Source: Octopus bimaculoides (Eukaryota). From it: 64,000 bases of DNA. Position 1 is the first letter of the stretch, and the number at the start of each line of letters is the position of its first letter. Of this stretch, positions 30,566-47,810 are shown piece after piece. The DNA is taken from contig NC_068994.1 of NCBI RefSeq assembly GCF_001194135.2, forward strand, positions 36,433,767-36,497,766, given 5' to 3'. The position numbers were made by a program, and so were the translations under genes. The notes beneath the pieces are model-generated. The model was given only the letters and a program-made list of their open reading frames with translations, made no database searches and had not been told where the DNA came from.

Positions 30566-33500
30566 ATGCGTGCGCGTGTATGTATAATAATCTTAGGGAA
30601 ATAAATCTGTATCAGGATAATAAATATGGGTGTTGAATTTCCATGACATTTTACTACCTGCTACTGCTGCTATAAATTCCCTTTTAAAGTACTTTATATA
30701 ATGCCTATAGACATTAGTGGAATGCTTGGTAAATTAAAACCTAATTTAAACTGAGGTTGTTTGTCTTTATGCAGCATAGAGCACCACCCAAAATAACCAG
30801 TAACTTTCATTTGGAACTGCTAATGAATTCTATTTCACCAGTTAATTTCAAGATTATTTGTGAGTGTACTATCTACAATGATTCCATAACTGCTTTTCAT
30901 TCTAGTGAATTTTTAGCATAACTTGCTGTTTGAAATCAGTGGACAATAGAATCTGTTGATAAATATGTAAGATCTGACATATACAGAGACAAATATATTT
31001 GGCAATTCATTTATAATTGGAATCTCTTCTGCTCATATAAAACTAAAGTAAAGGAAAACCAAAACTCCAATGTTGGCTTCAGCCATAAATCAAACTCATG
31101 CATTGGAAATATTTATGAAGATCCTGAGGTCTATGACTCTGTTCTTCAAGTGGAAAGTTGTACAATAGGCTTTGCTGAAGCAGATAGAAAAAATTTGAAT
31201 TTGAAAAGATATCAAAGCTCAACCATGGTTTTTTGTACAACTGTACCTTAGCAGGACATCAAAGGTGTTATTTCTCTAGAAAATTTCTGCAGTTTCATCA
31301 CAGCAAATATCTAACCTGTGATACTATTTGTTTCAAGTATAAGAAAAAGGAACACTTTCCAAATAGTTGTAGGTCTTTAAATAAACCCATGATTGCTTCT
31401 GTTCTGTCTGAAACACTTGCCTACATCAAAAGATTATATCATTGGCTTAACTATTCATGGAATTTCTCTAAAAGGACTCTTAACAAAGGCTGTTTTGAAA
31501 TTTTCATCTCTGAATTATATGTGTATTAACTTTGCTAGCAAATGAATACAAGAATTTCATTTAATTTCATCCTGCTAATCAAGAAATATTGTGAATTAGA
31601 ACTAAAAGGAGAAATCTGCCTATAGGATACATATATATATATATATATATAGATTCAGGTGAATATGGTACTTAAGTTTAGGCACCAGAATTAAGTATGG
31701 TATTATTCATACAGTTTCAAAATAAGATTGTAATTCTGTAAGTTTACATCATCTGATGCTGAAATTATTCTATCAGATGTGAATAGAATGCATAGAGAAG
31801 ACATTGTCAAGCCAAGTGACTCTGAGTGACCACAAATACATTTTATTAATGATATCAGCTAAAAAGGTGGTGAGCTGGCAGAATTGTTAGCATGCCAGGC
31901 AAAATGCTTTGTAACACCTTTCCCCAAAATTTCAGGCCTTGTGCCTGTCATAGAAAGTATTAATTATAACAGCAAAAGAAAGCTAGCAGTTGATTAATCT
32001 AATGCTTTTTATAAATTCATCTACTTACCTGTCCAAATTAGATGACCATATTAACAAAATAACTTATTACTAGATATATGATATTATTGACATCTGTGGT
32101 GTATACCACTATATTGCATTGAATTCTGATGCTCAAGTATTTATTGCTTTCAAGGCAGACAGTCAGTTCTTTCCATTATTTTTTCCTCCTTAACCATCTT
32201 AGTTTCAACCTTAAAAAATGGTGTTGCAGTCTTACAGATGGCATTGCATGTTTCCAATAAATGATAAACAATCTTATTTCTGACACAAGTTAGAAGACAT
32301 GTGTAACTAAGTTAAATGACATCACCATATGTTGTAAGATCAAAGAGGAACACATCAAAAAATCTAAATTCTTAAGATGTTTGTATATTTAATACGAAGC
32401 TGAAAATAAATTTTCAAGTTAATCTGTCTGTATTCTAGATTATCAAATTGATTAGAATGAATTGCATCTTGATCTCTTAATGTTTTACTCTATTTTAAAA
32501 AAATGCTTATGCCTACTAATAAACAATTTTTATCTTGTATTATACATCTGTTCACTTATTTTCCATAAGTCCCTTGCTTCACCGAAAGATAAGACCTTAA
32601 TCAATATTCAGTTTCTCAAAGGAGACTGTATGACCCTCTATGACTTAAAGGCTGCTGTTATAGAGTCTGTCAAGATTAAAGCTGATGAACATGTCATTTA
32701 CCATTAAAATGGATATTTCTGAGACTACTATCAGAGATACTCTTAATGAAAATAATATGCCTGTATAATGCATTTCTAAGATAGTAAATTCTGCTGAGAA
32801 AAATCATTGCACATTTGAAAAAAAACAAGCAAGCAAAAATAAGTGGCACAAGTCTTTCTGTTATGCAAATGATTAACCCCAGTGATTGATCAGATGTCAT
32901 TGTTTATAAGACATGAAACACAAAATTAAAATTAAAATAAGAAGATATACTTGAAATTAGAACTCCTACCATTCTATTACAAAATTTTACATCCTCATGT
33001 ATTTCTTAATACTGCAGCAGATGTACTATCATGAGACTTTTGAAATATTGCTCTGCAGGGTAACGTCTTAGAACTACAAATTTTTCTGCTGTCCTGGTTG
33101 GTGTTACACTGTTGTTGCATTTTGGGTATGAAAGTTAAAGCTACAATACTATCATCTGGACCAATATCAGTTCATGTGATCCATGCATCCCTTTGACAAC
33201 TGAAGTGTCGACTTTAGGTGTTTGTTATCTTAACTTTCAAGTTATTTCTGACATAAGCTAAGAGAGATATATAACTAGGTAACTGACATCACCCTCAGGT
33301 AGTGAGATAAAAGTAACATAACAAAAAAATTATCTAAATTCTCAAGTTGCAGATTATTAGCAATAAATCATCCCATTTTTTTTTTTTTTTTTTGCTTCCC
33401 TGTCATGAAATTTATTTATCAACTGTCATTTCTTGCTTGATCATGTGTATTTTTTAAATTTCTAATTTTGACTTATCTAGACATGTTCACTTACATAAAA

Positions 33501-36424
33501 AAACTTCTAAACTGAAATCTTTCTTACTTGATAAGTGTGTCTCATTTTGTCACTTAACACCATTCTACCCTACAAGAAATGGGCAACATTTGTATTATAC
33601 TGGTAACATTTAGAAAATCATGACATTAGTTCTCCAGTCTAAAAATATCTCTGTACCATATGTGTATGGGTTTTATTGAATGCCTTACATTCATTGTGAT
33701 CCTTATGTTCATCATCAAATTCAACATTTCATGAATGCCTTTTGATTTCCCCAGAAATATGGCATACCAATCTAACATTTGTCATCAAGAAAGATTCTGT
33801 ACAGGAAATCGAATTGAAATAAGAACTAAAGTTCAAGAGGTTGAACTCATTATCGTCATCATCATCTTTACTTTATGTTTGCTTTTCTGGAATCAAAGCT
33901 TGCATTTGTTTCCCTTAGATTGAGAAGGAATTGTAGCAATTGGATATTTAAACCCACCAGGAGACACCTTAGATTAGGCTGAAATTAGGAACAGGTGTAT
34001 TCCTACTGAAAGTATCAATACTCATGTAACTCACCTTTACTCTTGTTAAAACACCTACACAGCAATCTGTCGAATACTACAATCTAATGAACCAGCTATG
34101 AGTTTTGTGTTCTATTATTCTACTTGACAAATATAACAACACTGAAAAATGTTATATCCAAAATATGTTGCATTGAAATATTGAACTATTGCTTTAGTAA
34201 TATTATAAGCATGTTTTTCAGGGATGGGGTGAAATAATATAATAATTTTATTAAAAAACGCTACATGATAATAACAATAGAAATGGTTATCGAAACTCTA
34301 TGAGATTCTGCAATTACTTCGAGATCCTGCCGTTAAATTAAATGCTGTCAAGCAAGAAATGGTAGTTGATGGATAAATGTCACAAGTTAAAAAAGCAGAA
34401 AACAAGAAGATTCATTGACAAAAGTCAACATTTATTATTGATACTGTTATACCTAGAGATCTGTAAGTAAATGTCATGGAAGTATTTGTAAATTGAAACC
34501 TAATGTAAATTGACATTGTTTTAGGTTATTCACACTTCAGTGTGTATATATATGTATGTCTGCATTTTATCTTGTTTATATTGTGTCTCTTTATATCCCA
34601 TAACATAGAAGTTAGGTAAGTACTGATGATAAATATATATGGAATATATATGTTTGATTAAACCTTTGAAGGTGTTGCTCTTGCATTGTTACAGTCAATG
34701 ACTGAAACAAGTAAAAGTATGCATCGACCATATGCAATGTAAGAGATAACTTCATCAGACATGGAGTAATTTTATGGATAGAAATCATACAAACATCCCA
34801 CAAGGAGAACATGACAACCTTATCTCATTCAGCAGCATTAGATGCTATTATGGAAACATAACAGCATGTGACATCGCTGCTTATGAACAATATGCAACTA
34901 AAACCTTCGAATTTTTTTCAAATGCTAAATTCCAGAAGCTTTGATCTTTCATGATGGAAACACGTAACATTTGCATTACCAAATCCAAAATGTTTTTTCA
35001 GAGTCAGAAAATAATGTTTTCTAAACAACTGTGTACTTTCTTTCTTCATAACATAACCGTAATTCTCATGAGAGTAATCTTCACATATCTGTGAAGATTA
35101 AATGATTCAGGTCTTAGATAAGTGATTCATGTCCAAGCCACTGCACTGTGTGTATCCAAAATCCTTAACCAGCAGTTCACTAAGATGATGATAAATACCA
35201 AAAGAGGGAGGGAGTCATTATCCTAAACTATATGAAGCATTATAAAAGTTACAAGTGTGTTTTTTTTTCATACTACAATGTCAGAGAGGCAAATGCAGTA
35301 CCCATGACCATACTTCATCTAAGAAGGAAGTGCAGTACCCATGACCATTTTCTATTTTTTCAGAACCTTTGAGAAAGGTGAGAGAAAAGGAGAAAGTTTC
35401 TGGCCCAAATTCTTGAAACAAAGAGAATGCCACTGAAGGCAACCAAGAACTAGACAGTGGTGTTAAAGAAGCAATTGATTAAGCTTACGATCCAAGGCTT
35501 CAAATGCCAAATATTTGGAATGAATAGCAGTGAGGTGCTACATATGGAGACATGAAGGCAGACTGACTAAGAGTTGAATATATATAATATTGGCAGCAAA
35601 TTTTGGCACAAGGCCAGCAATTTAAGGGGAAGTGGGTACATTGATTATATCAATCCTAGTGTTCAACTGATACTTATTTTATCAATTCTGAAAGGATGAA
35701 AGGCAATGTCAATCTTGACGGAATTTGAACTCAGAAATATAATGATTGACGATATGCCACTGAGCATTTTGTCCACTGTGCTAACGATTCTGCCAGTTTG
35801 CCGCCTTGAATTTATGTAATATTGAGGGATGAAAGATAATGGAACAAAGAAAGCTTAAGGTAGTGACAGATAAAAAGAAATATAAACATGTGTGAAATGG
35901 AGCAGAAAATTGTATGTGACTGTATAAGAGAGAAGAAAGTTGTGTAAAGAAAACAAGAGGGAAAATGCATCTTTGTGTGTGTGTGAACATGTGCTGGTTT
36001 GTGAGAGAAGTCAGAAGAGGTAATGGGTGGGGGTCGAAAAATGCTTTGCTTTAGTGAATGTTATAGTGCATACTGTTGTAGCTCCTTGATGAAGTCTAAT
36101 CGAGCATACACTTCTATAATTAAATATATTCTGGCTGTGACCATCCTTTCATTTTAAGGATCTCTAGAACTTTCGTTAGCTAATATATGGTGCTCTCCAC
36201 TTTTCTTGGATAAGATGTCATTTTGAAGGAAGATTTGATAGCTATTTGTAGATTTAAACCAAGTCGGGTGACCGTCGAGATGCTCCACCCTTCTAACTCG
36301 TGTGAATGCTTGTAGGATGGATTAATAGTGCAAAAGGAAGGTGGGGAGAGAGATACGGGAGAAAGAGGGATAGGGGAAAAGGAAATATGAATATAAAACG
36401 TAACAGTTTTAAAGTTGTACTTAC

Positions 36425-36621
36425 CTGGAGTGATTTGATTGTTTTTGGTCACTTTATATTATTTATCGGTCATTTAAGTATTTACGACGGATATTTAATA
36501 AATATCTCCCATTTAATTATCGCAGAGGAAAAAATTATCATTGTTCAGCGTTAAAGGGGCATAACTGCAACGTCACTTCGCAAAAATCTTTGCATTTCAG
36601 ATCATATTCTTTTCAATTGAT
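36425..36621 (-). other. Candidate non-coding (5' UTR) exon of the Pcdh gene, 197 bp
   Basis: Strong acceptor cttttgtttctctttcttttattgcag| (AG 36623-36622) and consensus donor CCAG|GTAAGT (intron starts at 36424). It is on the Pcdh strand, in unique CpG-retaining sequence, with no long ORF. Confidence 0.55.
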
Positions 36622-37765
36622 CTGCAATAAAAGAAAGAGAAACAAAAGTTACTAAAGATATAATTCCAATGACCGATTTCAGTTATCCAGAGCTGGAAAT
36701 TATTTACAGTGAAAGGATTTACGGCATCTACCATTCCAAAGAAATTTTGATTTATTCAACATAGAATGAAGATCGGACTTTAAAATAGTATGTATTAAAA
36801 AGTTAGGCAAATAATGCAGTAGATGTGTCTATGTTCATTTTTCAAACGTAAAATTAAAATTGTGGCTTTCACTTTGGCTCGTAATAAAAGCTTTCAGTTC
36901 TCGAAACTTTTGTTTTTGTTTGCTAAATGTCATTCTATAACTCTATTGTTGTGATGAAAATTACTTCTGTGTGTATTTATGCATGTATATATTTGTGTGC
37001 GTGTACATGTATGTACGTATTTATATGCGTATGACAAACAAAAAAATTATATCTAATTCTTATTAAATTTGGAAAAATCCGAAAAAAAAAAAGAATATAA
37101 ATTGCGAATTTTCCACTTGAAAAAAATATGTATTTAAAATAAGTAATAGATAAATTTTAATAGTGTGTGCGTGGGGAAAATAATGTGTGAAATATAACAA
37201 AATTACTTGGTTTTCTTTATTCAAAGTATTTTGTACCAACCCAAAGCGAAAGTCTCCGAATGTGGAACTTTTTAGCTTTCGGTCAGTTGGAACCATTTTT
37301 CATAAACTGTCCTTGAAAATTCATCGCCCTGTTAGGTTTGAAGGTTTGGTATAACCTTAGATAAAAGTTTACCAGTTTTCTTTCTTTCTTTTCATTTTTT
37401 TTTAACGTTAAAGATCGACGGTTATAACAATTATAAGAAATACAGTTTGCTGCTAAATCTGTTTAGCTCTATTCGGTCATGCTTACGGCTGAAATCGTTC
37501 TCCCTTCGCATCTTTCCTTATAGCACGTTGCCAGCACTTTCTTTTAAAACATAAACGAGTACATCATCCATTGTACCCTATCTACTGTCCACTTTTTTTT
37601 TAAAGAGGGTATCATTTTGGGGTTGTTTAGCTATTATTTCTTGCGAATCGAACAACTGTGTAATCTCGCCTTTTAGTTCAAGTACAATTCTTTCAAGAGA
37701 AAGTACAAAACACGCACAACACAGAAAATGATTGAATATCGATATTGTTTTTTTTATACATTGTA

Positions 37766-37877
37766 ACTTTCACTTTTCATCTAAGTGGGAGTTTCATTGT
37801 CTCATCTCAAACAAAATTGAAAGCAGTTTCACTTTGGCCGCCCTCTAGTGCGTGGTTGTGTGATATAAGTGAAAGTG
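37766..37877. promoter_or_regulatory. Three IRF-E/PRDM1-type AAGTGAAA boxes
   Basis: GAAAAGTGAAAGT on minus (37766-37778), AAAGTGAAACT on minus (37825-37835) and AAGTGAAAGTG on plus (37867-37877). Confidence 0.4.
37836..37855 (-). promoter_or_regulatory. CTCF-like motif
   Basis: Minus strand reads CCACGCACTAGAGGGCGGCC. GCACTAGAGGGCGG matches the CTCF core CCRSYAGRKGGCRS at 13 of 14 positions. Confidence 0.5.
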
Positions 37878-38775
37878 TTTATGCGCGCTTGTAAAGTGCG
37901 TTTGTGCTTACAAGCTGAGAAATGCATTGTTTTGTTAATAGAATCTCGGCTCGTTGCATTAACGACACTATTTCGATTTCTTTTTATTGCCATTCCGCTA
38001 TTTTTCCAGCTAGTTCCAGTGAAAATGAATAATCACATTTTCTCGTCGCTAAAATTTGGCGATCTTTCGTTACGATTACTTTTTCTGTCAAAGGACCTCG
38101 TGCATTTGTTTACATCAATTCGGCAGTTTCCGTAAAAAAAATACTAGTATCGAAGGATGGCCCAATATAATTTCTTTCTTTACCTTACTTCTGATCGAGC
38201 AGACTCATGTTTGAAGGCCTTCTGTTTAAAGGATGATAATATTATCCAGCGTGACTTACCTTCTATTTTCTAAAGTGTAAAGTGAGTTCAGGGAGTTTTG
38301 GCTGCTATTTTTAACAGATCGAACCACTGAGTAGTCTCATGTGTTTAGTCAGTTACAAAGTTTTTAGAACTTTCTCTCTTTTCAATAAAAGAAAAGAGAG
38401 AAAGAGAGAGAAAGGCGTGTGATTTAAAGGAGATTTAGCTGTTGTTTGTAGCATATCCCACGACCGGTAAGGTTTAGAGTTGATAGAAAATTTTTTAATA
38501 GCATAAATGAGTTTATGCTATTAATGGGGAGAAAATATCGAAAAACAAATTCTTGTCGGAGTGAGAAAGAAATGAGGAAGGTGATCATAGGATATGCTAG
38601 AAAGAAAAGCCAAATCTTCCATTAGTCACACACCTTACGTCTAAAGATGTATTTTTTTTTTTTTACCGTAAAGGATTCTCCAATAGTTTTTAAGTGCCTA
38701 GTCCTCACCACAAAAATCATTGTACGTAGTGCCCACAAAGTTGATTAAAGCTGGTCGGTTTAAAGATAAAAAAAT

Positions 38776-39134
38776 TCTTTTACTTGTTTCAGTCATTTGA
38801 CTGTGGCAATGCTGGAGCACTGCCTTTAGTCGAACAAATCAACCCCAAGCCTAGTACTTATTCTATCAGTTCCTTTTGCTGAACCGCTAAGTTACAGGGA
38901 CGCAAACGCACCAACATCAGTTGTCAAGCAATGGTGATGGGGACAAATACAGACACACACACACAAATATATACATGTATAGAGATATATATATATTTAT
39001 GTTGGGCTTCTTTAAGTTTCCGTCTACCAAATCCATTCACAAGGCTTGGTCGGCCTGAGGCTATAGTAGAAGACTGAACCTGGAACCATGTGGTTGGGAC
39101 ACAAGCTTCTTACCACACAACCATGCCTGCACCT
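38776..39134 (-). mobile_element. Family A SINE, near full length, small deletion in CORE segment
   Basis: Tail, microsatellite and head as in 48732-49146, but agaagac|tgaacc lacks the acttgcccaagg...ggg segment. Confidence 0.85.
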
Positions 39135-41153
39135 ATAAATTTTTGAAAATTAATATTTTACTAAAAAGAGCATTTCTAACAGCATTTTCAAAGGGCATTT
39201 CCAAGGGCACTGTGTAAACAAAAATCTGAAAAATCTCCCATCAAAGTGGAACAATTCCAACTTGTTGGTGTTTCCTAAGTCCAACATTCACCTTCATTTC
39301 TGCTGAAGTATTTGACTCCAAAGATCTTCAAGCAATCAATTACTTTGGTCAATTACAATTTCTTTTTCTTTTCTCTAAATCTAGAATCTTGTGCACATTA
39401 AAAAAAACCTATTTAGTTTGTGAATGGATGCTTTTTTTCCAGACAAGCAATAGATAAGCCAAGACTGTATCTCTATTTGGATTCACAGTTGTAATAACTT
39501 CACTCCTATTAAGACACTAATTATAATTAGAGTGACATGAATGTTATACATTTTTATTTCTTTCATCTTATAATCCAACTTTGTCCATCTCCAAAAATAA
39601 TGTTTAGCTTGATTTGAGTTGATGAATTAGCAGTCATTTAGAGTATAAGATAGATTACATGCAATATTTGTTCTTGCACTCAGCAGTTCATTTCAACAGT
39701 ATTATAAACCCTTAAGCAAAGTGATGAGCTGTGGACCTCTGGGTAAATACCCAGTGTGTTCATACCTTAAGATGGCACTGGCTCTCTGCTCTCTGAGTTT
39801 AGATCCCACCCAGAACACCTTTGCCTTTTAGGAGCAATAAATAAAGTACCTAACTCTAGTAGAATTGATTCTATCCCTTCTTTCTCCATCTCACTCTGGA
39901 AGAAACTGACTGTGAACAGATCTAGTAAAGGATGGTCTCTGCCAGTTTCAAAAATACTCAAGACGGTGTACATCACTATGTCATCCTTATGACAATATCA
40001 GACATTAAGTGGGAGAGATGAGGCAAGGTTTGTTTAGATTAGGATGGAGGAATGTTCAAAACAGAACAATGGCTTACATTCTATGGAGTATTACTGCAAT
40101 TACCTACCATTTGCTGTTTTGTCATTGATGAAGAATCAAATCTGCTTTATTTGAGTAGATCGAGTAGACTGCTGAGCTGATTACAAATATGCTTAAGATA
40201 AAAAAAAAAAATATGTATATAGTATTCTTGTTTAGAACCAGCTCAACCTTGATAGGACAGACCTATTGTCAAGGCATTTTGGTTGTGACCATCCTGTCAT
40301 TTGAAGGAATATCTAATACTATATTATCTAGTGTATTCATCAAAAATAATAGAGTATAATTTTAAGGAGACTTGGATGCCATTTCATGATTGAGCAACTT
40401 GCATAGAGGCTCCTATGTAGGACAATCTTCAGCATTTGTTTTGTATTTCAGATGTAGTTTTCTTGTCGTTATTGAGGATATATACTTGTACAGTTTAGTG
40501 ACATAACTATATAATCTTTGTTTTAAAGGTGAGTTTATTGAAGAAGTCTGAATTTTTCATTGTTGCTGTAGAAAATAATATCAGGTCTTCAGTATTTGCT
40601 GTACCTAAAGTGTTTGTTTTCTTTTTAGAGTGACCCATTAATATTTTATATTTTTGAAGGTAAGCATTTATATTCATGTTTTATTTGATTAAGCCTTCTA
40701 ATGAATATTATTTTATATTTGTTTTTAATATAACTTTCTGATACATAGAAAAGCAATTGTAGAAAGTTATTGGTAATGTTAGCAATATGTTATACCCACT
40801 GATTTTGTACAGTGTTGACTATCATATTAGTGATGTAGTGTTTTGGCAGCGTACTTGTCTCTTTTATTTTTAAAGAATCTTTCATTCATCAGGAAACTAA
40901 CTTTTGTTTTTTGAATAATGGAGCCTTATTTTTGTATTCTGTTATGCTGTGAGAATTTGCTCTTTCTCAATACCAGCAACATCTCCTTCAAAACTAGCAG
41001 TAATACCTTCTTCAAATCACATCTTAAAATCTTACAAGAAAGAAAGTTCAGATTAGGCAATGTAATTGCTGATAGACAAAAATATGAAATGGTCACAGAG
41101 AGATCGTACTGAAAAACATTTTTTTTTCAGCAGAGCTCTATTCAACATTTCTA

Positions 41154-41493: not shown

Positions 41494-42036
41494 ATCATCA
41501 TCATCATCGTTTAACGTCCGCTTTCCATGCTAGCATGGGTTGGACGATTTGACTGAGGACTGGTGCAACCGGATGGCTACACCAGGCTCCAATCTAATTT
41601 GGCAGAGTTTCTACAGCTGGATGCCCTTCCTAACGCCAACCACTCAGAGAGTGTAGTGGGTGCTTTTACGTGTCACCCGCACGAAAACGGCCACGCTCGA
41701 AATGGTGTCTTTTATGTGCCACCCGCACAAGAGCCAGTCCAGGGGCACTGGCAACGATCTCACTTGGCTTGCCGGGTCTTCTCACGCACAGCACATTTCC
41801 AAAGGTCTCGGTCAGTAGTCATCGCCTCGGTGAGGCCCAATGTTCGAAGGTCTTGCCTCACCACCTCAGCCCAGGTCTTCCTGGGCCTACCTCTTCCACG
41901 GGTTCCCTCAACTGTCAGGGAGTGACACTTTTTCACGCAGCTATCCTCATTCATTCTCACCACATGTCCAAACCAGCGCAATCGTCTCTCTTGCACACCA
42001 CTACTGACGCTTCTTATGTTCAGCTTTTCTCTCAAG
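41494..42036 (-). mobile_element. 5'-truncated RTE-clade LINE (ORF C-terminus, 3' UTR, (GAT)n tail); young
   Basis: LREKLNIRSV...QERRLRWFGHVVRM...GTRGRGRPRKTW.EVV..DL..LGL...DRDLW is a typical RTE C-terminus. The frame is intact and CpGs are retained. Confidence 0.92.
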
Positions 42037-43056
42037 ATAATTAACAATATTTCATTGGATACCTTCCACCTCTCCAGGATTAACATACCTTGCTTAATTA
42101 ATTATACTACACTACTAAAAATTGTAAAAGAAATAACACATTTCTCATTTAGGTTGAGACTTCTCACTTCTTTACTTGTTTCAGTTAGAGAACTTAGGCC
42201 ACGCTAAGTTACAGAACTTAAGCCATACCTTGAAAAGTTTAGTCAATCATAGAAACTCCTGTTCTTATTTTAAAGTTTGATACCTAAGTTAATAATATGT
42301 ATTTGTCACATCACTAAATTGTGAAATATAAACAAAGGTGCTGTTTTTACAAGCAGTGTCAGCATATAGATAAATGTAGATACAGCTAGTCACATGCACA
42401 CACTCACATATTCATACAAATCTGCATATGTGAATGAATGTGTGTCCGTGTGTGTGTACAAGGTGCTTCTGTACAGTTACCAGGTTTACTCAGCAGGCAT
42501 TGGACCTGAGACCATAATAGAAGACACTGAACCAGAATGCTAGGCTGTGGGACCAAACCTCAGACCAAAATTGTTGCAGAGTTAACTTCATAACCACATA
42601 CCTATGCCTGCAATTGTATACATAAGTGTATATAATAAAATGTAAAATAATACTTAGTGGTCGGCTTGTGGTATTTAGTTACAACCCTTTACTTTTTGTA
42701 TTCAAATCTTACTAAAGTTGACTTTGTCCTTTATTCTTCTGAAGGTCTGTGGCCACATAGACTCTTGCGCCAAAAATAAAACCCTAAATTCTTTATATTC
42801 CCTTTCTATCAGTGTAAAGACAGAATCTCTACACAAGAAAGAATCAACAGGGAGAATCTTTTTATAGAGAAATTCCAAACGCTTCTTAACATACAAACTC
42901 CTCGGTGACCATATTCCTTTCTCTCGCCTACCCATTGAAATACATATAAATTTACCTCTTGTTTCTCTAAGATCAGACATAAACTTCCTGTTGACAAAGA
43001 GTCCAGAACTCCAACTAAAGAGTATAATATCCACAGAATTGTCTTCCCTTACACAC

Positions 43057-46759: not shown

Positions 46760-47810
46760 AACAGCTCCATGATAAATTTGCCAACTGTAAATAAAGTAAA
46801 ATCATGAACACATGGAACCCCAAAATATGCCACAACTCACAATGCGAGAGACTGTGCATATACAATGACTATAGCTTCACCCATTTTCCTGGGACAGGAT
46901 GCACAATTCATACAAGTAATACCAGCCAATGCCAAACCACTCATCTTACAGCAACACCACCACCATTACTACTAAATGCTAAATCACACTTAATAATGTC
47001 TACATACATAACCTGGAATCCTAAAAATCTGTTGCTATTCTGAAAATTAATGATATTATGGACGATGACACTATAACTTACAGTTAATGACCAAGATTCA
47101 AACTCAGCATCTAGACTACATGGTCTCCAAGCCATACTGCTAAAAATGTGCAAAAACAACCTCATGAAGCCATTAGAGATACTATTTCAAAAGTCACTAG
47201 ATACCGGAAAATTCCCAGACCTACTTAATGACAATGCTAACACCTATACACAAGGATGGTAACAGGACTGAAGCTAAAAATTACAGACCTGATTCTCTCC
47301 CATCTCAGACTTATCAAATTATCAGAAGCATTATCCCAAATAGAATTAAACAACCTCATAGATGATATACAGCATGGTTTTTGGACTGGATGAAGTTGCC
47401 TTTCACAATTATTACAACACCATAAGACCATTCTTAATAATCTCTTGAGAGGAAAGGACACTGACTGTATATACTTTGATTTTCTTAAGGCATTTAACAA
47501 GATTGGGATCATCAATCATAAGTTAAGGGATCTTAGTATCACAAGAAAACTCAGAGGATGGCTTTTGGATTTCCTACATGGTAGGAGACAATCTGTTGTT
47601 GCAAATGGTTTTCACTCTGCAAAGTCACCTATAATAAGTGGTTTGCCTCAGAGAACAATTCTAGGACTATAATTATTTATCATTGACCTATCACAAGTGC
47701 ACATATCCAAACTATTGAGTTACACTGATGATGCAAAACTATCAATGACTATCCAAACTCCAGAAGATACTGTTACACTCCAAGATGAGCTCAACCTCAT
47801 TTATATGGGA
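46760..47810 (+). mobile_element. Degenerate CR1/L2-group LINE reverse transcriptase
   Basis: KPLEILFQKSLDTGKFP, IHKDGNRTEAKNYRP, QHGF, DCIYFDFLKAFNK, LRGWLLDFLHGRRQSVVANG, SGLPQRTILG and YTDDAKL, with stops and frameshifts. Confidence 0.88.

What the first reader, a model, noticed from the sequence alone, without database searches (positions are those of the whole stretch)
37766..37877. CTCF-like site bracketed by inverted IRF/PRDM1 boxes at a putative protocadherin promoter
Seen: GCACTAGAGGGCGG (13/14 match to the CTCF core) oriented in the Pcdh transcription direction. It is flanked by a perfect inverted pair TTTCACTT (37827-37834) / AAGTGAAA (37867-37874), with a third perfect IRF-E GAAAAGTGAAAGT 50 bp away. 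Established: vertebrate clustered Pcdh promoters carry oriented CTCF sites that drive stochastic promoter choice via cohesin loops, and cephalopod Pcdhs expanded independently. Inference: a possibly convergent CTCF-anchored promoter module, with IRF/PRDM-family factors as competitors or gates. This is the most intriguing candidate system in the window, but it rests on one motif instance.
Basis: partly seen in the sequence, partly recalled or inferred. Interest (0 to 1): 0.72.

Follow-up and report, generated by a model that had tools for sequence, protein, structure and literature searches.

The report
Octopus CpG-island promoter-like element with CTCF motif
The CTCF-like and IRF-like motifs are real and lie in the centre of a unique, promoter-like CpG island 32 kb upstream of an Octopus bimaculoides protocadherin gene, but nothing here shows that it is that gene's promoter or a general CTCF-based promoter-choice device.

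Summary
Every motif sits at the stated coordinates. The window is Octopus bimaculoides chromosome CM046614.1. Its only protocadherin (Pcdh) coding exon (3437-5909, minus strand, "protocadherin beta-12") starts 32 kb from the site.

Alone, the CTCF match is weak evidence: about 5% of random 64-kb windows contain one as good. The context is not random:
- The site lies at the centre of a 2.6-kb single-copy island (36001-38600) with CpG o/e 1.0, against 0.18-0.29 around it.
- The island holds all four window copies of AGTGAAAG.
- On the Pcdh-sense strand it has a TATA box 29 nt before an initiator-like site (about 37729).
- It also has a perfect splice donor, CAG|GTAAGT, at 36425.

All seven octopod Pcdh coding exons examined begin at a splice acceptor. 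Two O. vulgaris paralogues have annotated exons more than 10 kb upstream. A distant promoter with a non-coding first exon is therefore plausible.

This is not shown. No transcript evidence and no orthologous DNA could be reached. No comparable module occurs in 372 kb of other Pcdh-cluster sequence. No element at a fixed distance, like the vertebrate conserved sequence element (CSE), precedes the start codons.

Verdict: a probable real regulatory island of an ordinary kind. The convergent CTCF promoter-choice idea remains a single-instance hypothesis.

The parts
36001..38600 (.). Single-copy island in which CpG is not depleted. It has 73 CpGs, CpG o/e 1.0 (1.31 in the core 37401-38200), TpG/CpA o/e 1.0 and GC 0.34. 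The finding lies at its centre.
   Evidence: The background has CpG o/e 0.18-0.29 and TpG/CpA o/e 1.33-1.47. The island has no non-self BLAST hit in 436 kb. It is flanked by interspersed repeats at 35578-35812 and 38770-39156.
37836..37854 (-). CTCF-like 19-mer CACGCACTAGAGGGCGGCC (core 37838-37851). It lies at about -107 to -125 from the putative transcription start site (TSS), in sense orientation.
   Evidence: 19.0 bits, the best in the window. P is about 0.05 per 64-kb window and about 0.001 inside the island.
37867..37877 (+). AAGTGAAAGTG, an IRF/PRDM1-type box antisense to the Pcdh gene, at about -138 to -148.
37826..37838 (-). GCCAAAGTGAAAC box, abutting the CTCF-like core. The 12-mer GCCAAAGTGAAA recurs at 36867-36878.
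   Evidence: (family D14).
37766..37778 (-). GAAAAGTGAAAGT, a perfect match to the IRF-E / PRDI consensus, at about -37 to -49.
37748..37758 (-). TATAAAAAAAA, a TATA box whose first T is 29 nt upstream of the initiator A.
   Evidence: Read. Of 42 TATAAAA sites in the window (both strands), only 5 have an initiator at +26 to +32.
37736..37745 (.). ATATCGATAT palindrome containing TATCGATA, which matches the Drosophila DRE consensus. It lies between the TATA box and the initiator.
   Evidence: TATCGA occurs 11 times in the window, 4 of them in the island.
37725..37731 (-). TCATTTT, which matches the initiator consensus YYANWYY. The putative +1 A is at 37729.
   Evidence: Read and checked. This is an inferred start site, not a measured one.
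36419..36427 (-). Perfect splice donor CAG|GTAAGT with last exon base 36425. It lies 1305 nt downstream of the putative TSS and still inside the island.
   Evidence: The window has only 3 copies, all on the minus strand, against 0.52 expected on both strands. One of them (535) is the real donor of Pcdh exon 2.
36865..36878 (-). GCCAAAGTGAAAGC, the fourth box, in a second cluster about 950 bp downstream in sense direction.
36708..36715 (+). AGTGAAAG, the fifth box. All 4 AGTGAAAG copies in the window are in the island.
32023..32031 (-). Second perfect minus-strand donor CAG|GTAAGT. A candidate small non-coding exon runs 32211->32029. Another candidate, 34141->34035, has a TTTTTCAG acceptor and an AAG|GTGAGT donor.
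   Evidence: Inference only.
5909..5930 (-). Splice acceptor (polypyrimidine tract plus CAG; intron ends at 5910, exon starts at 5909), 76 nt upstream of the Pcdh ATG (5833).
   Evidence: The same TTTCAG acceptor precedes the ATG in 7 of 7 octopod Pcdh genes. Alignment to Argonauta stops at 5932.
3437..5909 (-). Large coding exon of O. bimaculoides protocadherin beta-12 (XP_014773884.1, XP_052829048.1, XP_052829049.1).
   Evidence: 799 of 799 residues identical to P0121. Exon 2 lies at about 535-712.

Best explanation
The finding is the upstream part of a real, single-copy cis-regulatory island (36001-38600) that has escaped the CpG decay seen in the DNA around it.

The island is most likely an RNA polymerase II promoter that fires on the minus strand, the Pcdh-sense strand. 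Read on that strand, its order is:
- an inverted AAGTGAAAGTG box (-138 to -148);
- the CTCF-type site (-109 to -122, sense orientation);
- an AAAGTGAAAC box (-97 to -106);
- a perfect IRF-E/PRDI box (-37 to -49);
- a TATA box (-29);
- a TATCGATA palindrome;
- an initiator at about 37729.

The inferred first exon is non-coding and ends at the perfect donor at 36425. I think the transcript is then most likely spliced, across about 30 kb and possibly through small exons near 34.1 and 32.1 kb, to the acceptor at 5909. That acceptor opens the protocadherin beta-12 coding exon, which would make the island a distal, perhaps alternative, promoter of this Pcdh.

Shown: the motifs, the island, its uniqueness, the core-promoter geometry, the donors, and the acceptor before every Pcdh start codon.

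Inferred: that the island is transcribed, that it splices to the Pcdh exon, that CTCF binds the motif, and that an IRF- or PRDM1-type factor binds the AGTGAAAG boxes.
For: - CpG: o/e is 1.0-1.3 with no TpG/CpA excess, against 0.18-0.29 and 1.33-1.47 in the flanks, at the same GC content.
- Uniqueness: it is the largest CpG-rich patch among 35 found in 436 kb, and one of three with no repeat coverage.
- Homotypic motif cluster: AGTGAAAG occurs 4 times in the island and 0 times elsewhere in the window. The density in six other loci is 1 per 13 kb. Three AAGTGAAA within 110 bp arose in 0 of 4000 simulations.
- CTCF match: the best in the window, P about 0.001 inside the island.
- Core promoter: TATA at -29 from a YYANWYY initiator on the Pcdh-sense strand.
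- Donors: the only three perfect CAG|GTAAGT donors in the window are all on that strand. One is a verified Pcdh donor and one lies in the island.
- Gene structure: 7 of 7 Pcdh coding exons begin at a TTTCAG acceptor. Two O. vulgaris paralogues carry annotated coding sequence that starts more than 10 kb upstream and ends in the Pcdh leader.
- Transcript variants: three RefSeq accessions share this protein, which implies transcript variants with different UTRs.
- Long introns are normal here: coding ranges of 33-112 kb.
Against: - No transcript evidence of any kind. Exact and HMMER look-ups of ORFs in the island found nothing.
- The island is 32 kb from the start codon.
- A strongly conserved non-coding stretch much closer to the gene is a rival seat for the Pcdh promoter. 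Window 7001-8000 is 99-99.6% identical to O. vulgaris, and blocks of it are also conserved in Argonauta.
- TATA plus initiator pairs are common in this AT-rich DNA: 5 per window.
- An inferred 1.3-kb first exon is long.
- Strong donor-like sites are also enriched on the plus strand near the island, and one minus-strand donor (38260) lies upstream of the putative start.
- CTCF-matrix hits of this score occur about once per 100 kb in these clusters.
Confidence: 0.4

Rival explanations
1. The island is a distal enhancer or an insulator/boundary element in the gap of more than 58 kb between two Pcdh genes. It would be bound by CTCF and by factors that recognise AGTGAAAG, but it would not be a promoter. 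The TATA box, initiator and donor would then be incidental.
For: - The island lies between the coding sequences of two tandem Pcdh genes: about 27 kb below the upstream neighbour's last coding exon and 32 kb above the next start codon.
- It has a homotypic motif cluster plus a CTCF-type site.
- A CTCF-like motif is reported enriched at domain boundaries in the squid Euprymna (PMC9023564).
Against: - The core-promoter geometry and a perfect sense-strand donor inside the island point to transcription.
- No oppositely oriented partner of 13 bits or more lies downstream in the window or in the next 12.5 kb.
- CpG-preserved islands are more typical of promoters. That comparison rests on established knowledge for vertebrates and is only an inference for octopus.
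Confidence: 0.2
2. The island is the promoter of an independent transcript, such as a long non-coding RNA or an unannotated small-exon gene on either strand, that has nothing to do with the Pcdh coding exon.
For: - The same promoter-like features apply.
- Strong donors also lie on the plus strand just beyond the island: 38466, 40528 and 40659.
- There is a TATAAG at 37863-37868 on the plus strand.
- The proximal conserved stretch at 7-8.3 kb could be the real Pcdh promoter.
Against: - No ORF of 70 aa or more outside the Pcdh exon hits any Pfam family except a mariner (Mos1) HTH fragment.
- No Rfam family or tRNA matches.
- No other gene is called within 10 kb of the Pcdh in the O. bimaculoides, O. 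vulgaris or O. sinensis annotations.
- The Pcdh leader needs an upstream exon from somewhere.
Confidence: 0.2
3. One reading: a convergently evolved, CTCF-anchored promoter module shared by octopus Pcdh paralogues. It would drive stochastic promoter choice through cohesin loops, with IRF/PRDM1 factors as competitors or gates.
For: - The motif is sense-oriented, as at all vertebrate Pcdh promoters (PMC7811963).
- CTCF and cohesin exist in cephalopods (PMC9023564).
- The CTCF core contains a CpG inside a CpG island, so methylation-sensitive binding is conceivable (inference).
Against: - No second instance exists in 372 kb around six other Pcdh genes. No other hit of 13 bits or more has an AAGTGAAA within 150 bp.
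- The proximal 400 bp of seven genes share no conserved element.
- The only other fully unique island found outside the window lies upstream of the closest paralogue. It has an AAAGTGAAAGTGAA box but no CTCF-like match.
- Single-cell data report about 19 PCDH genes per cell and cell-type-specific PCDHs in O. vulgaris (PMC9712504). That does not by itself indicate one-promoter choice.
- Paralogue promoters probably lie beyond the 10-kb flanks that could be fetched, so this test is incomplete.
Confidence: 0.07
4. Chance motif co-occurrence in neutral DNA that is CpG-rich only because it is young. Candidates are a low-copy insertion, a nuclear copy of mitochondrial DNA, or foreign DNA.
For: - Other CpG-rich patches in these loci are mostly repeats or insertions. 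For example, 10251-10750 is absent from O. vulgaris and 53589-54093 is a repeat.
- Whether the island exists in other species could not be checked.
Against: - No copy occurs elsewhere in 436 kb.
- GC content equals that of the flanks.
- There are no long ORFs under the standard or the invertebrate mitochondrial code, and no transposon protein domains.
- The joint statistics of the boxes, the CTCF match and the donors are far from chance.
Confidence: 0.1

Closest known systems
Vertebrate clustered-protocadherin promoter CTCF site (conserved sequence element, CSE)
   Same: A CTCF-type motif upstream of a Pcdh gene, in the forward (sense) orientation and in CpG-rich DNA with a CpG inside the motif. 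The gene lies in a tandem array of same-direction Pcdh genes (PMC7811963).
   Different: - The vertebrate CSE sits at about the same short distance before the start codon of nearly every variable exon and carries a CGCT box. This site is 32 kb from the start codon, has no CGCT box, and has no counterpart at six other genes.
- Octopus Pcdhs are whole duplicated genes without shared constant exons (PMC9068888).
- Binding and looping are untested.
CpG-island (non-methylated island) RNA polymerase II promoters
   Same: A kilobase-scale patch with CpG o/e of about 1 and no TpG/CpA excess, in a strongly CpG-depleted background. It is unique sequence, has core-promoter elements near its centre and a splice donor downstream.
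   Different: - GC content is not raised: 0.34 against 0.32.
- It has a TATA box, which is unusual for vertebrate CpG-island promoters.
- Octopus has a mosaic, invertebrate-type methylome in which intergenic CpGs are reported as comparatively unmethylated (PMC9476566). Why the flanks are so depleted is therefore not explained.
- Methylation state and transcription are unmeasured here.
IRF-E / ISRE / PRDI elements (GAAA-repeat sites bound by IRFs and by PRDM1/Blimp-1)
   Same: GAAAAGTGAAAGT and AAGTGAAAGTG match the consensus perfectly, and five AGTGAAA(G/C) boxes cluster in the island.
   Different: - The neighbouring gene is a neuronal adhesion gene, not an immune gene.
- Cephalopod IRF and PRDM1 binding specificities are not established here.
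- Two boxes share a longer 12-mer, GCCAAAGTGAAA, which hints at a different or composite factor.
Drosophila DRE (TATCGATA) core-promoter element bound by DREF and BEAF-32
   Same: A perfect TATCGATA inside the palindrome ATATCGATAT, between the TATA box and the initiator.
   Different: In flies it is known as a motif of housekeeping promoters that usually lack a TATA box (from memory). There is no evidence that it works in molluscs, and here it is a single 8-mer.

Membership tests
Vertebrate-type Pcdh promoter CTCF site (CSE) | Sequence matches the CTCF core motif | tested here: met
   13 of 14 positions match CCASYAGRKGGCRS. About 5% of random windows reach that score.
Vertebrate-type Pcdh promoter CTCF site (CSE) | Forward orientation, on the sense strand of the Pcdh gene | tested here: met
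   The motif is on the minus strand, and so is the Pcdh ORF. The definition is taken from PMC7811963.
Vertebrate-type Pcdh promoter CTCF site (CSE) | Present at about the same short distance upstream of the start codon of most paralogues | tested here: not met
   The site is 32 kb from the ATG. The proximal 400 bp of seven genes share no conserved block. The six Pcdh loci fetched from other species or paralogues, 372 kb in all, contain no CTCF hit (13 bits or more) with an AAGTGAAA box nearby. Caveat: the true start sites of the paralogues are unknown and probably lie more than 10 kb upstream.
Vertebrate-type Pcdh promoter CTCF site (CSE) | CGCT box with a methylation-sensitive CpG | tested here: not met
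   There is no CGCT in 37836-37854. One CpG is present, in GGGCGG.
Vertebrate-type Pcdh promoter CTCF site (CSE) | Convergent partner site of reverse orientation at a downstream enhancer | tested here: inconclusive
   No plus-strand hit of 13 bits or more lies at lower coordinates in the window; the best is 12.1 bits at 33951. There is none in the 12.5 kb beyond the window start. A partner could lie further away.
Vertebrate-type Pcdh promoter CTCF site (CSE) | CTCF occupancy and cohesin-dependent looping | not testable with these tools
   This needs CUT&Tag or ChIP and Micro-C in octopus neural tissue.
Vertebrate-type Pcdh promoter CTCF site (CSE) | Conservation in orthologous loci | not testable with these tools
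   Orthologous DNA was obtained only for window 1-15.7 kb (O. vulgaris) and 55.9-64 kb (O. sinensis). Attempts to reach the 37.8-kb region failed.
CpG-island RNA polymerase II promoter | Local CpG o/e near 1 over at least 500 bp in a CpG-depleted genome | tested here: met
   The 2.6-kb island has o/e 1.0 and its core 1.31, against 0.18-0.29 in the flanks. The TpG/CpA excess is absent only in the island.
CpG-island RNA polymerase II promoter | Not a transposable element or recent insertion | tested here: inconclusive
   There are no copies in 436 kb, no transposon domains and no mitochondrial-type ORFs. Presence at the syntenic site in another species could not be checked.
CpG-island RNA polymerase II promoter | Core-promoter elements and a downstream splice donor on one strand | tested here: met
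   TATA at -29, the initiator TCATTTT, and a perfect donor at +1305, all on the minus strand. Specificity is moderate.
CpG-island RNA polymerase II promoter | Mapped transcription start and unmethylated state | not testable with these tools
   No RNA or bisulfite data are accessible here.
IRF-E / ISRE / PRDI element | GAAA-repeat consensus (GAAANNGAAA, AAGTGAAAGT), usually clustered | tested here: met
   Three boxes lie within 112 bp and five in the island. AGTGAAAG occurs 4 times in the island and 0 times elsewhere in the window.
IRF-E / ISRE / PRDI element | Bound by an IRF or PRDM1 protein and controlling an inducible or immune gene | not testable with these tools
   No binding data. The nearest gene is a protocadherin.

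The most novel reading that the evidence does not exclude
An octopus protocadherin gene is transcribed from a distal CpG-island promoter, about 32 kb upstream of its coding exon, that carries a sense-oriented and functional CTCF site. Comparable CTCF-bearing distal promoters, out of reach of the 10-kb flanks examined here, would serve other paralogues. That would be convergent evolution of CTCF-anchored Pcdh promoter architecture in a mollusc.
Probability: 0.1. Interest if true: 0.75.

Novelty: new member of a known kind. Interest (0 to 1): 0.4.

Why it matters
How cephalopods regulate their roughly 170 independently expanded protocadherin genes is unknown. The literature searches made here found no description of an octopus Pcdh promoter, start site or CTCF site.

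If this island is the distal promoter of protocadherin beta-12, two things follow:
- It gives a concrete locus for testing whether CTCF takes part in Pcdh regulation outside vertebrates: CM046614.1 at about 36,469,767-36,472,366.
- Octopus Pcdh promoters would have to be sought tens of kilobases upstream of the coding exons, at unique CpG-preserved islands, and not next to the start codons.

If it is only an orphan regulatory island, it is an ordinary element.

Tried and rejected
**Fetching the orthologue of the 37.8-kb region**
- A homology search with all ORFs of 28 aa or more from 37.3-38.4 kb joined together gave no hits.
- A HMMER search of the 88-aa ORF against 1.84 billion representative proteins gave no hits.
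- An exact look-up of the 77-aa sense ORF inside the putative exon 1 found no record.
- A search with the first 161 residues of the Pcdh protein, meant to find transcript fragments with 5' UTRs, returned nothing. This shows the word index is unreliable for short queries, so the null result is weak.
- The flanks of the neighbouring genes stop 22 kb and 18 kb short of the site.
- The Argonauta locus is not more compact, so its flank does not reach either.

**Other identities for the element, all rejected**
- Non-coding RNA gene: no Rfam family and no tRNA. The one sub-threshold mir-297 hit is a TG microsatellite.
- Second Pcdh gene or pseudogene near the site: none.
- Tail exons of the upstream Pcdh gene inside the window: none.
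- Other protein-coding gene: only a Mos1 HTH fragment.
- Interspersed repeat.
- Nuclear mitochondrial copy or bacterial DNA: no long ORFs under either genetic code.
- RNA polymerase III promoter: a TTTT run lies at +2 to +5 of the putative start (read).

**Other checks**
- A 15-mer shared with O. sinensis L006 (AAGTGAAAGTGTTTA) has no matching context and was judged a chance match.
- Two O. bimaculoides paralogues returned no DNA because their gene ranges exceed 100 kb.
Full report
**1. The observation**

- GCACTAGAGGGCGG on the minus strand at 37838-37851;
- TTTCACTT at 37827-37834;
- AAGTGAAA at 37867-37874;
- GAAAAGTGAAAGT on the minus strand at 37766-37778.

The 14-mer matches the degenerate CTCF core CCASYAGRKGGCRS at 13 of 14 positions.

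- The 19-mer at 37836-37854 scores 19.0 bits. It is the best in the window, and the runner-up scores 13.9.
- 14 of 300 Markov-simulated windows reach that score.
- Equally good hits occur three times in 372 kb of other Pcdh-cluster DNA.
- Two of those three lie in a young repeat of about 400 bp.

The CTCF match alone is therefore what one expects in about one window in twenty.

The box cluster is different.
- AAGTGAAA is only mildly over-represented in the window: 11 copies against 6.6 expected.
- Three copies within 110 bp never arose in 4000 simulations trained on the local composition.
- The extended 8-mer AGTGAAAG occurs four times in the window, all within 1.2 kb of each other around the finding.

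**2. Where this is**

The window is Octopus bimaculoides chromosome CM046614.1; record coordinate = window coordinate + 36,433,766.

It holds one protocadherin ORF, at 3407-5833 on the minus strand.
- Over 799 residues, up to a splice donor, it is identical to "protocadherin beta-12" (XP_014773884.1, XP_052829048.1, XP_052829049.1).
- Exon 2 lies at about 535-712.
- No other Pcdh ORF, pseudogene or tail exon is in the window.
- No other protein domain appears except a mariner HTH fragment.
- No Rfam family or tRNA matches.

The upstream neighbouring Pcdh gene is the orthologue of O. sinensis P0006. Its coding sequence ends about 1 kb beyond the window's far end. The site therefore lies in a gap of more than 58 kb between coding sequences, 32 kb upstream of the start codon. 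It is not next to a Pcdh exon.

**3. What surrounds the motifs**

*CpG island.* The window as a whole is strongly CpG-depleted.
- The window's CpG o/e is 0.27. Background segments have 0.18-0.29, with a TpG/CpA excess of 1.33-1.47.
- The stretch 36001-38600 has 73 CpGs, o/e 1.0 (1.31 in the core 37401-38200) and no TpG/CpA excess. Its GC content is unchanged: 0.34 against 0.32.
- It is the largest CpG-rich patch in the window, and the finding is at its centre.
- It has no similarity to anything else in 436 kb of octopod Pcdh-cluster DNA. Repeats flank it at 35578-35812 and 38770-39156.
- Most of the other 34 CpG-rich patches found are partly or wholly repeats or insertions.
- It shows no long ORFs under the standard or the mitochondrial code.

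*Promoter geometry.* Read on the minus strand, the Pcdh-sense strand, the finding resolves into a classical promoter layout:
- inverted AAGTGAAAGTG at -138 to -148;
- the CTCF-like core at -109 to -122;
- AAAGTGAAAC at -97 to -106;
- GAAAAGTGAAAGT at -37 to -49;
- TATAAAAAAAA with its first T at -29;
- the palindrome ATATCGATAT, which contains the fly DRE consensus;
- TCATTTT, a match to the initiator consensus, with +1 at 37729.

Only 5 of the 42 TATAAAA sites in the window have an initiator at the right spacing.

*Splice donors.* A perfect donor, CAG|GTAAGT, lies 1305 nt downstream of the putative start and still inside the island (last exon base 36425).
- The window has only three perfect donors, against 0.52 expected on both strands. 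All three are on the minus strand.
- One of them (535) is the verified donor of Pcdh exon 2. The third is at 32029.
- Acceptor-donor pairs that could delimit small exons lie at 34141->34035 and 32211->32029.

*Second box cluster.* Two more boxes lie about 950 bp further on: GCCAAAGTGAAAGC at 36865-36878 and AGTGAAAG at 36708.

**4. Could a promoter 32 kb away serve the Pcdh gene?**

For:
- The coding exon does not start a transcript. A polypyrimidine tract and CAG end an intron at 5910, 76 nt before the ATG.
- All seven octopod Pcdh genes examined have the same TTTCAG acceptor 10-130 nt before their start codons. They come from O. bimaculoides, O. vulgaris (three genes), O. sinensis (two) and Argonauta.
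- In O. vulgaris, two paralogues carry annotated small "genes" of 74 and 89 aa. Their coding range starts more than 10 kb upstream and stops inside the Pcdh leader. That is what one expects from transcripts with far-upstream 5' exons.
- Coding ranges of 33-112 kb show that very long introns are normal in this family.
- Three RefSeq accessions for one protein imply UTR variants.

Against:
- Window 7001-8000, 1.2-2.2 kb upstream of the ATG, is 99-99.6% identical to O. vulgaris. That is more than the coding exon at 96-98%. Three blocks within 6989-7563 also align to Argonauta.
- That conserved, CpG-poor stretch is an equally good or better seat for the gene's proximal promoter or enhancer.

**5. 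Is it a family-wide module?**

- Loci around six other Pcdh genes total 372 kb: O. vulgaris P0001 (the orthologue), P0010 and P0025; O. sinensis P0003 and P0006; and Argonauta P0002. Each includes a 10-kb upstream flank, and several include long introns.
- In these loci no CTCF hit of 13 bits or more has an AAGTGAAA within 150 bp.
- AGTGAAAG is not enriched in their CpG-rich patches: the density ratio is 1.3.
- The proximal 400 bp of seven genes share nothing like the vertebrate CSE.
- The only other fully unique CpG patch outside the window is O. sinensis L005 2001-3500, 6.5-8 kb upstream of the closest paralogue. It has a sense AAAGTGAAAGTGAA box but no CTCF-like match.

The result is negative but incomplete, because the paralogues' true start sites probably lie beyond the flanks that could be fetched.

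Conservation of the site itself could not be tested. Orthologous DNA was obtained only for window 1-15.7 kb and 55.9-64 kb, and every attempt to reach the middle failed.

**6. Most likely mechanism and its rivals**

The joint evidence makes a real regulatory island probable; I put this at about 0.75. That evidence is the unique CpG-preserved island, the homotypic box cluster, the best CTCF match in the window, the TATA-initiator geometry and the strand-specific perfect donors.

My confidence in each reading is:

| Reading | Confidence |
|---|---|
| Minus-strand RNA polymerase II promoter with a non-coding first exon, feeding the beta-12 leader by long-range splicing | 0.4 for the statement as a whole; about 0.3 for the Pcdh link specifically |
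| Non-promoter enhancer or insulator | 0.2 |
| Promoter of an unrelated transcript | 0.2 |
| Chance motifs in young DNA | 0.1 |

No partner CTCF site in the convergent orientation lies in the window or in the 12.5 kb beyond it.

**7. Comparison with what is known**

- In vertebrates, CTCF sites lie at a fixed short distance before nearly every variable exon. They carry a CGCT box whose methylation blocks binding, all point forward, and they pair with reverse sites at downstream enhancers (PMC7811963). Here only the motif match and the orientation are met. The fixed position, the recurrence and the CGCT box are not. Binding and looping are untestable.
- Cephalopod Pcdh diversity arose by whole-gene duplication without shared exons (PMC9068888).
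- O. vulgaris cells express about 19 PCDH genes each, and some PCDHs are cell-type specific (PMC9712504).
- CTCF's role in spiralians rests on one report of motif enrichment at domain borders in a squid (PMC9023564 and PMC10658181).
- The octopus methylome is described as mosaic, with comparatively unmethylated intergenic CpGs (PMC9476566). The strong CpG depletion of the flanks, and the island's escape from it, is an observation I cannot fully explain.

**8. Verdict**

The element is an ordinary kind of thing, a promoter-type regulatory island, in an interesting place. The convergent CTCF promoter-choice reading remains a one-instance hypothesis. It failed the one defining feature that could be tested, though that test was incomplete. 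It needs transcript mapping and orthologue alignment before anything more is claimed.

Noticed in passing
window 6989-8285: A conserved non-coding stretch lies 1.2-2.4 kb upstream of the Pcdh ATG. Window 7001-8000 is 99-99.6% identical to O. vulgaris, above the coding exon's 96-98%. Blocks 6989-7133, 7233-7341 and 7423-7563 also align to Argonauta at 71-85%. The stretch is CpG-poor and AT-rich, and may be the proximal promoter or enhancer.
   Followed up: partly
window 5909-5930; L001-L006 just upstream of position 10001: All seven octopod Pcdh coding exons examined are preceded by a TTTCAG splice acceptor 10-130 nt before the ATG. The O. vulgaris annotation has 74-aa and 89-aa 'genes' whose coding range starts more than 10 kb upstream and ends inside the Pcdh leader. 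This implies far-upstream 5' exons.
   Followed up: partly
window 32023-32031 and 34035-34141 (minus strand): A second orphan perfect donor, CAG|GTAAGT, lies at 32029. Two acceptor-donor pairs could be small non-coding exons: 32211->32029 and 34141->34035. Half of all strong donor-like sites in the window (12 of 24, both strands) fall between 32 and 41 kb.
   Followed up: partly
window 36466, 36670, 37279, 37473: TGACCGA (reverse complement TCGGTCA, which contains the GGTCA nuclear-receptor half-site) occurs 5 times in the window, 4 of them inside the CpG island. Part of this enrichment reflects the CpG inside the motif.
   Followed up: no
L001 16173-16564; L002 12811-13010 and 43161-43551; L003 68383-68800; L005 16457-16880 and 45630-45794; L006 40719-41048: A young interspersed repeat of about 400 bp is present in the O. 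vulgaris and O. sinensis Pcdh loci. The full-length copies are 94-98% identical to one another; two truncated copies (L002 12811-13010, L005 45630-45794) are 82-90% identical. It carries a CTCF-like GCTCCGGCAGGGGRTGGTG (14-19 bits) in mixed orientations and is absent from the O. bimaculoides window. It accounts for most of the other strong CTCF-matrix hits.
   Followed up: partly
L005 2001-3500 (O. sinensis, upstream of P0003): This is the only other fully unique CpG-rich patch found outside the window. It lies 6.5-8 kb upstream of the closest paralogue's ATG. It has a sense-strand AAAGTGAAAGTGAA box at 3310 and a TATAAAA at 2361, but no CTCF-like match.
   Followed up: partly
O. bimaculoides paralogues P0014 and P0105; L002, L003, L005, L006: Pcdh coding ranges are very long: 33, 39, 58, 97, 110 and 112 kb. 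Each has a single large exon, followed by tail exons that are specific to that gene and lie tens of kilobases downstream.
   Followed up: no
whole window versus 36001-38600: The background is strongly CpG-depleted (o/e 0.18-0.29, TpG/CpA o/e 1.33-1.47), including the Pcdh coding exon (0.20). Yet a published methylome describes octopus intergenic CpGs as comparatively unmethylated (PMC9476566). The cause of the depletion is unexplained.
   Followed up: no
window 41557-42101 and 47240-47672; window 10251-10750: Reverse-transcriptase-like ORF fragments lie at about 41.6-42.1 kb and 47.2-47.7 kb. A Mos1 HTH fragment lies somewhere in the window. The CpG-rich stretch at 10251-10750 has no counterpart in O. 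vulgaris and is probably an insertion.
   Followed up: no
window 1773, 8310, 12679, 13790, 54143: The window contains 742 N bases in at least five assembly gaps.
   Followed up: no
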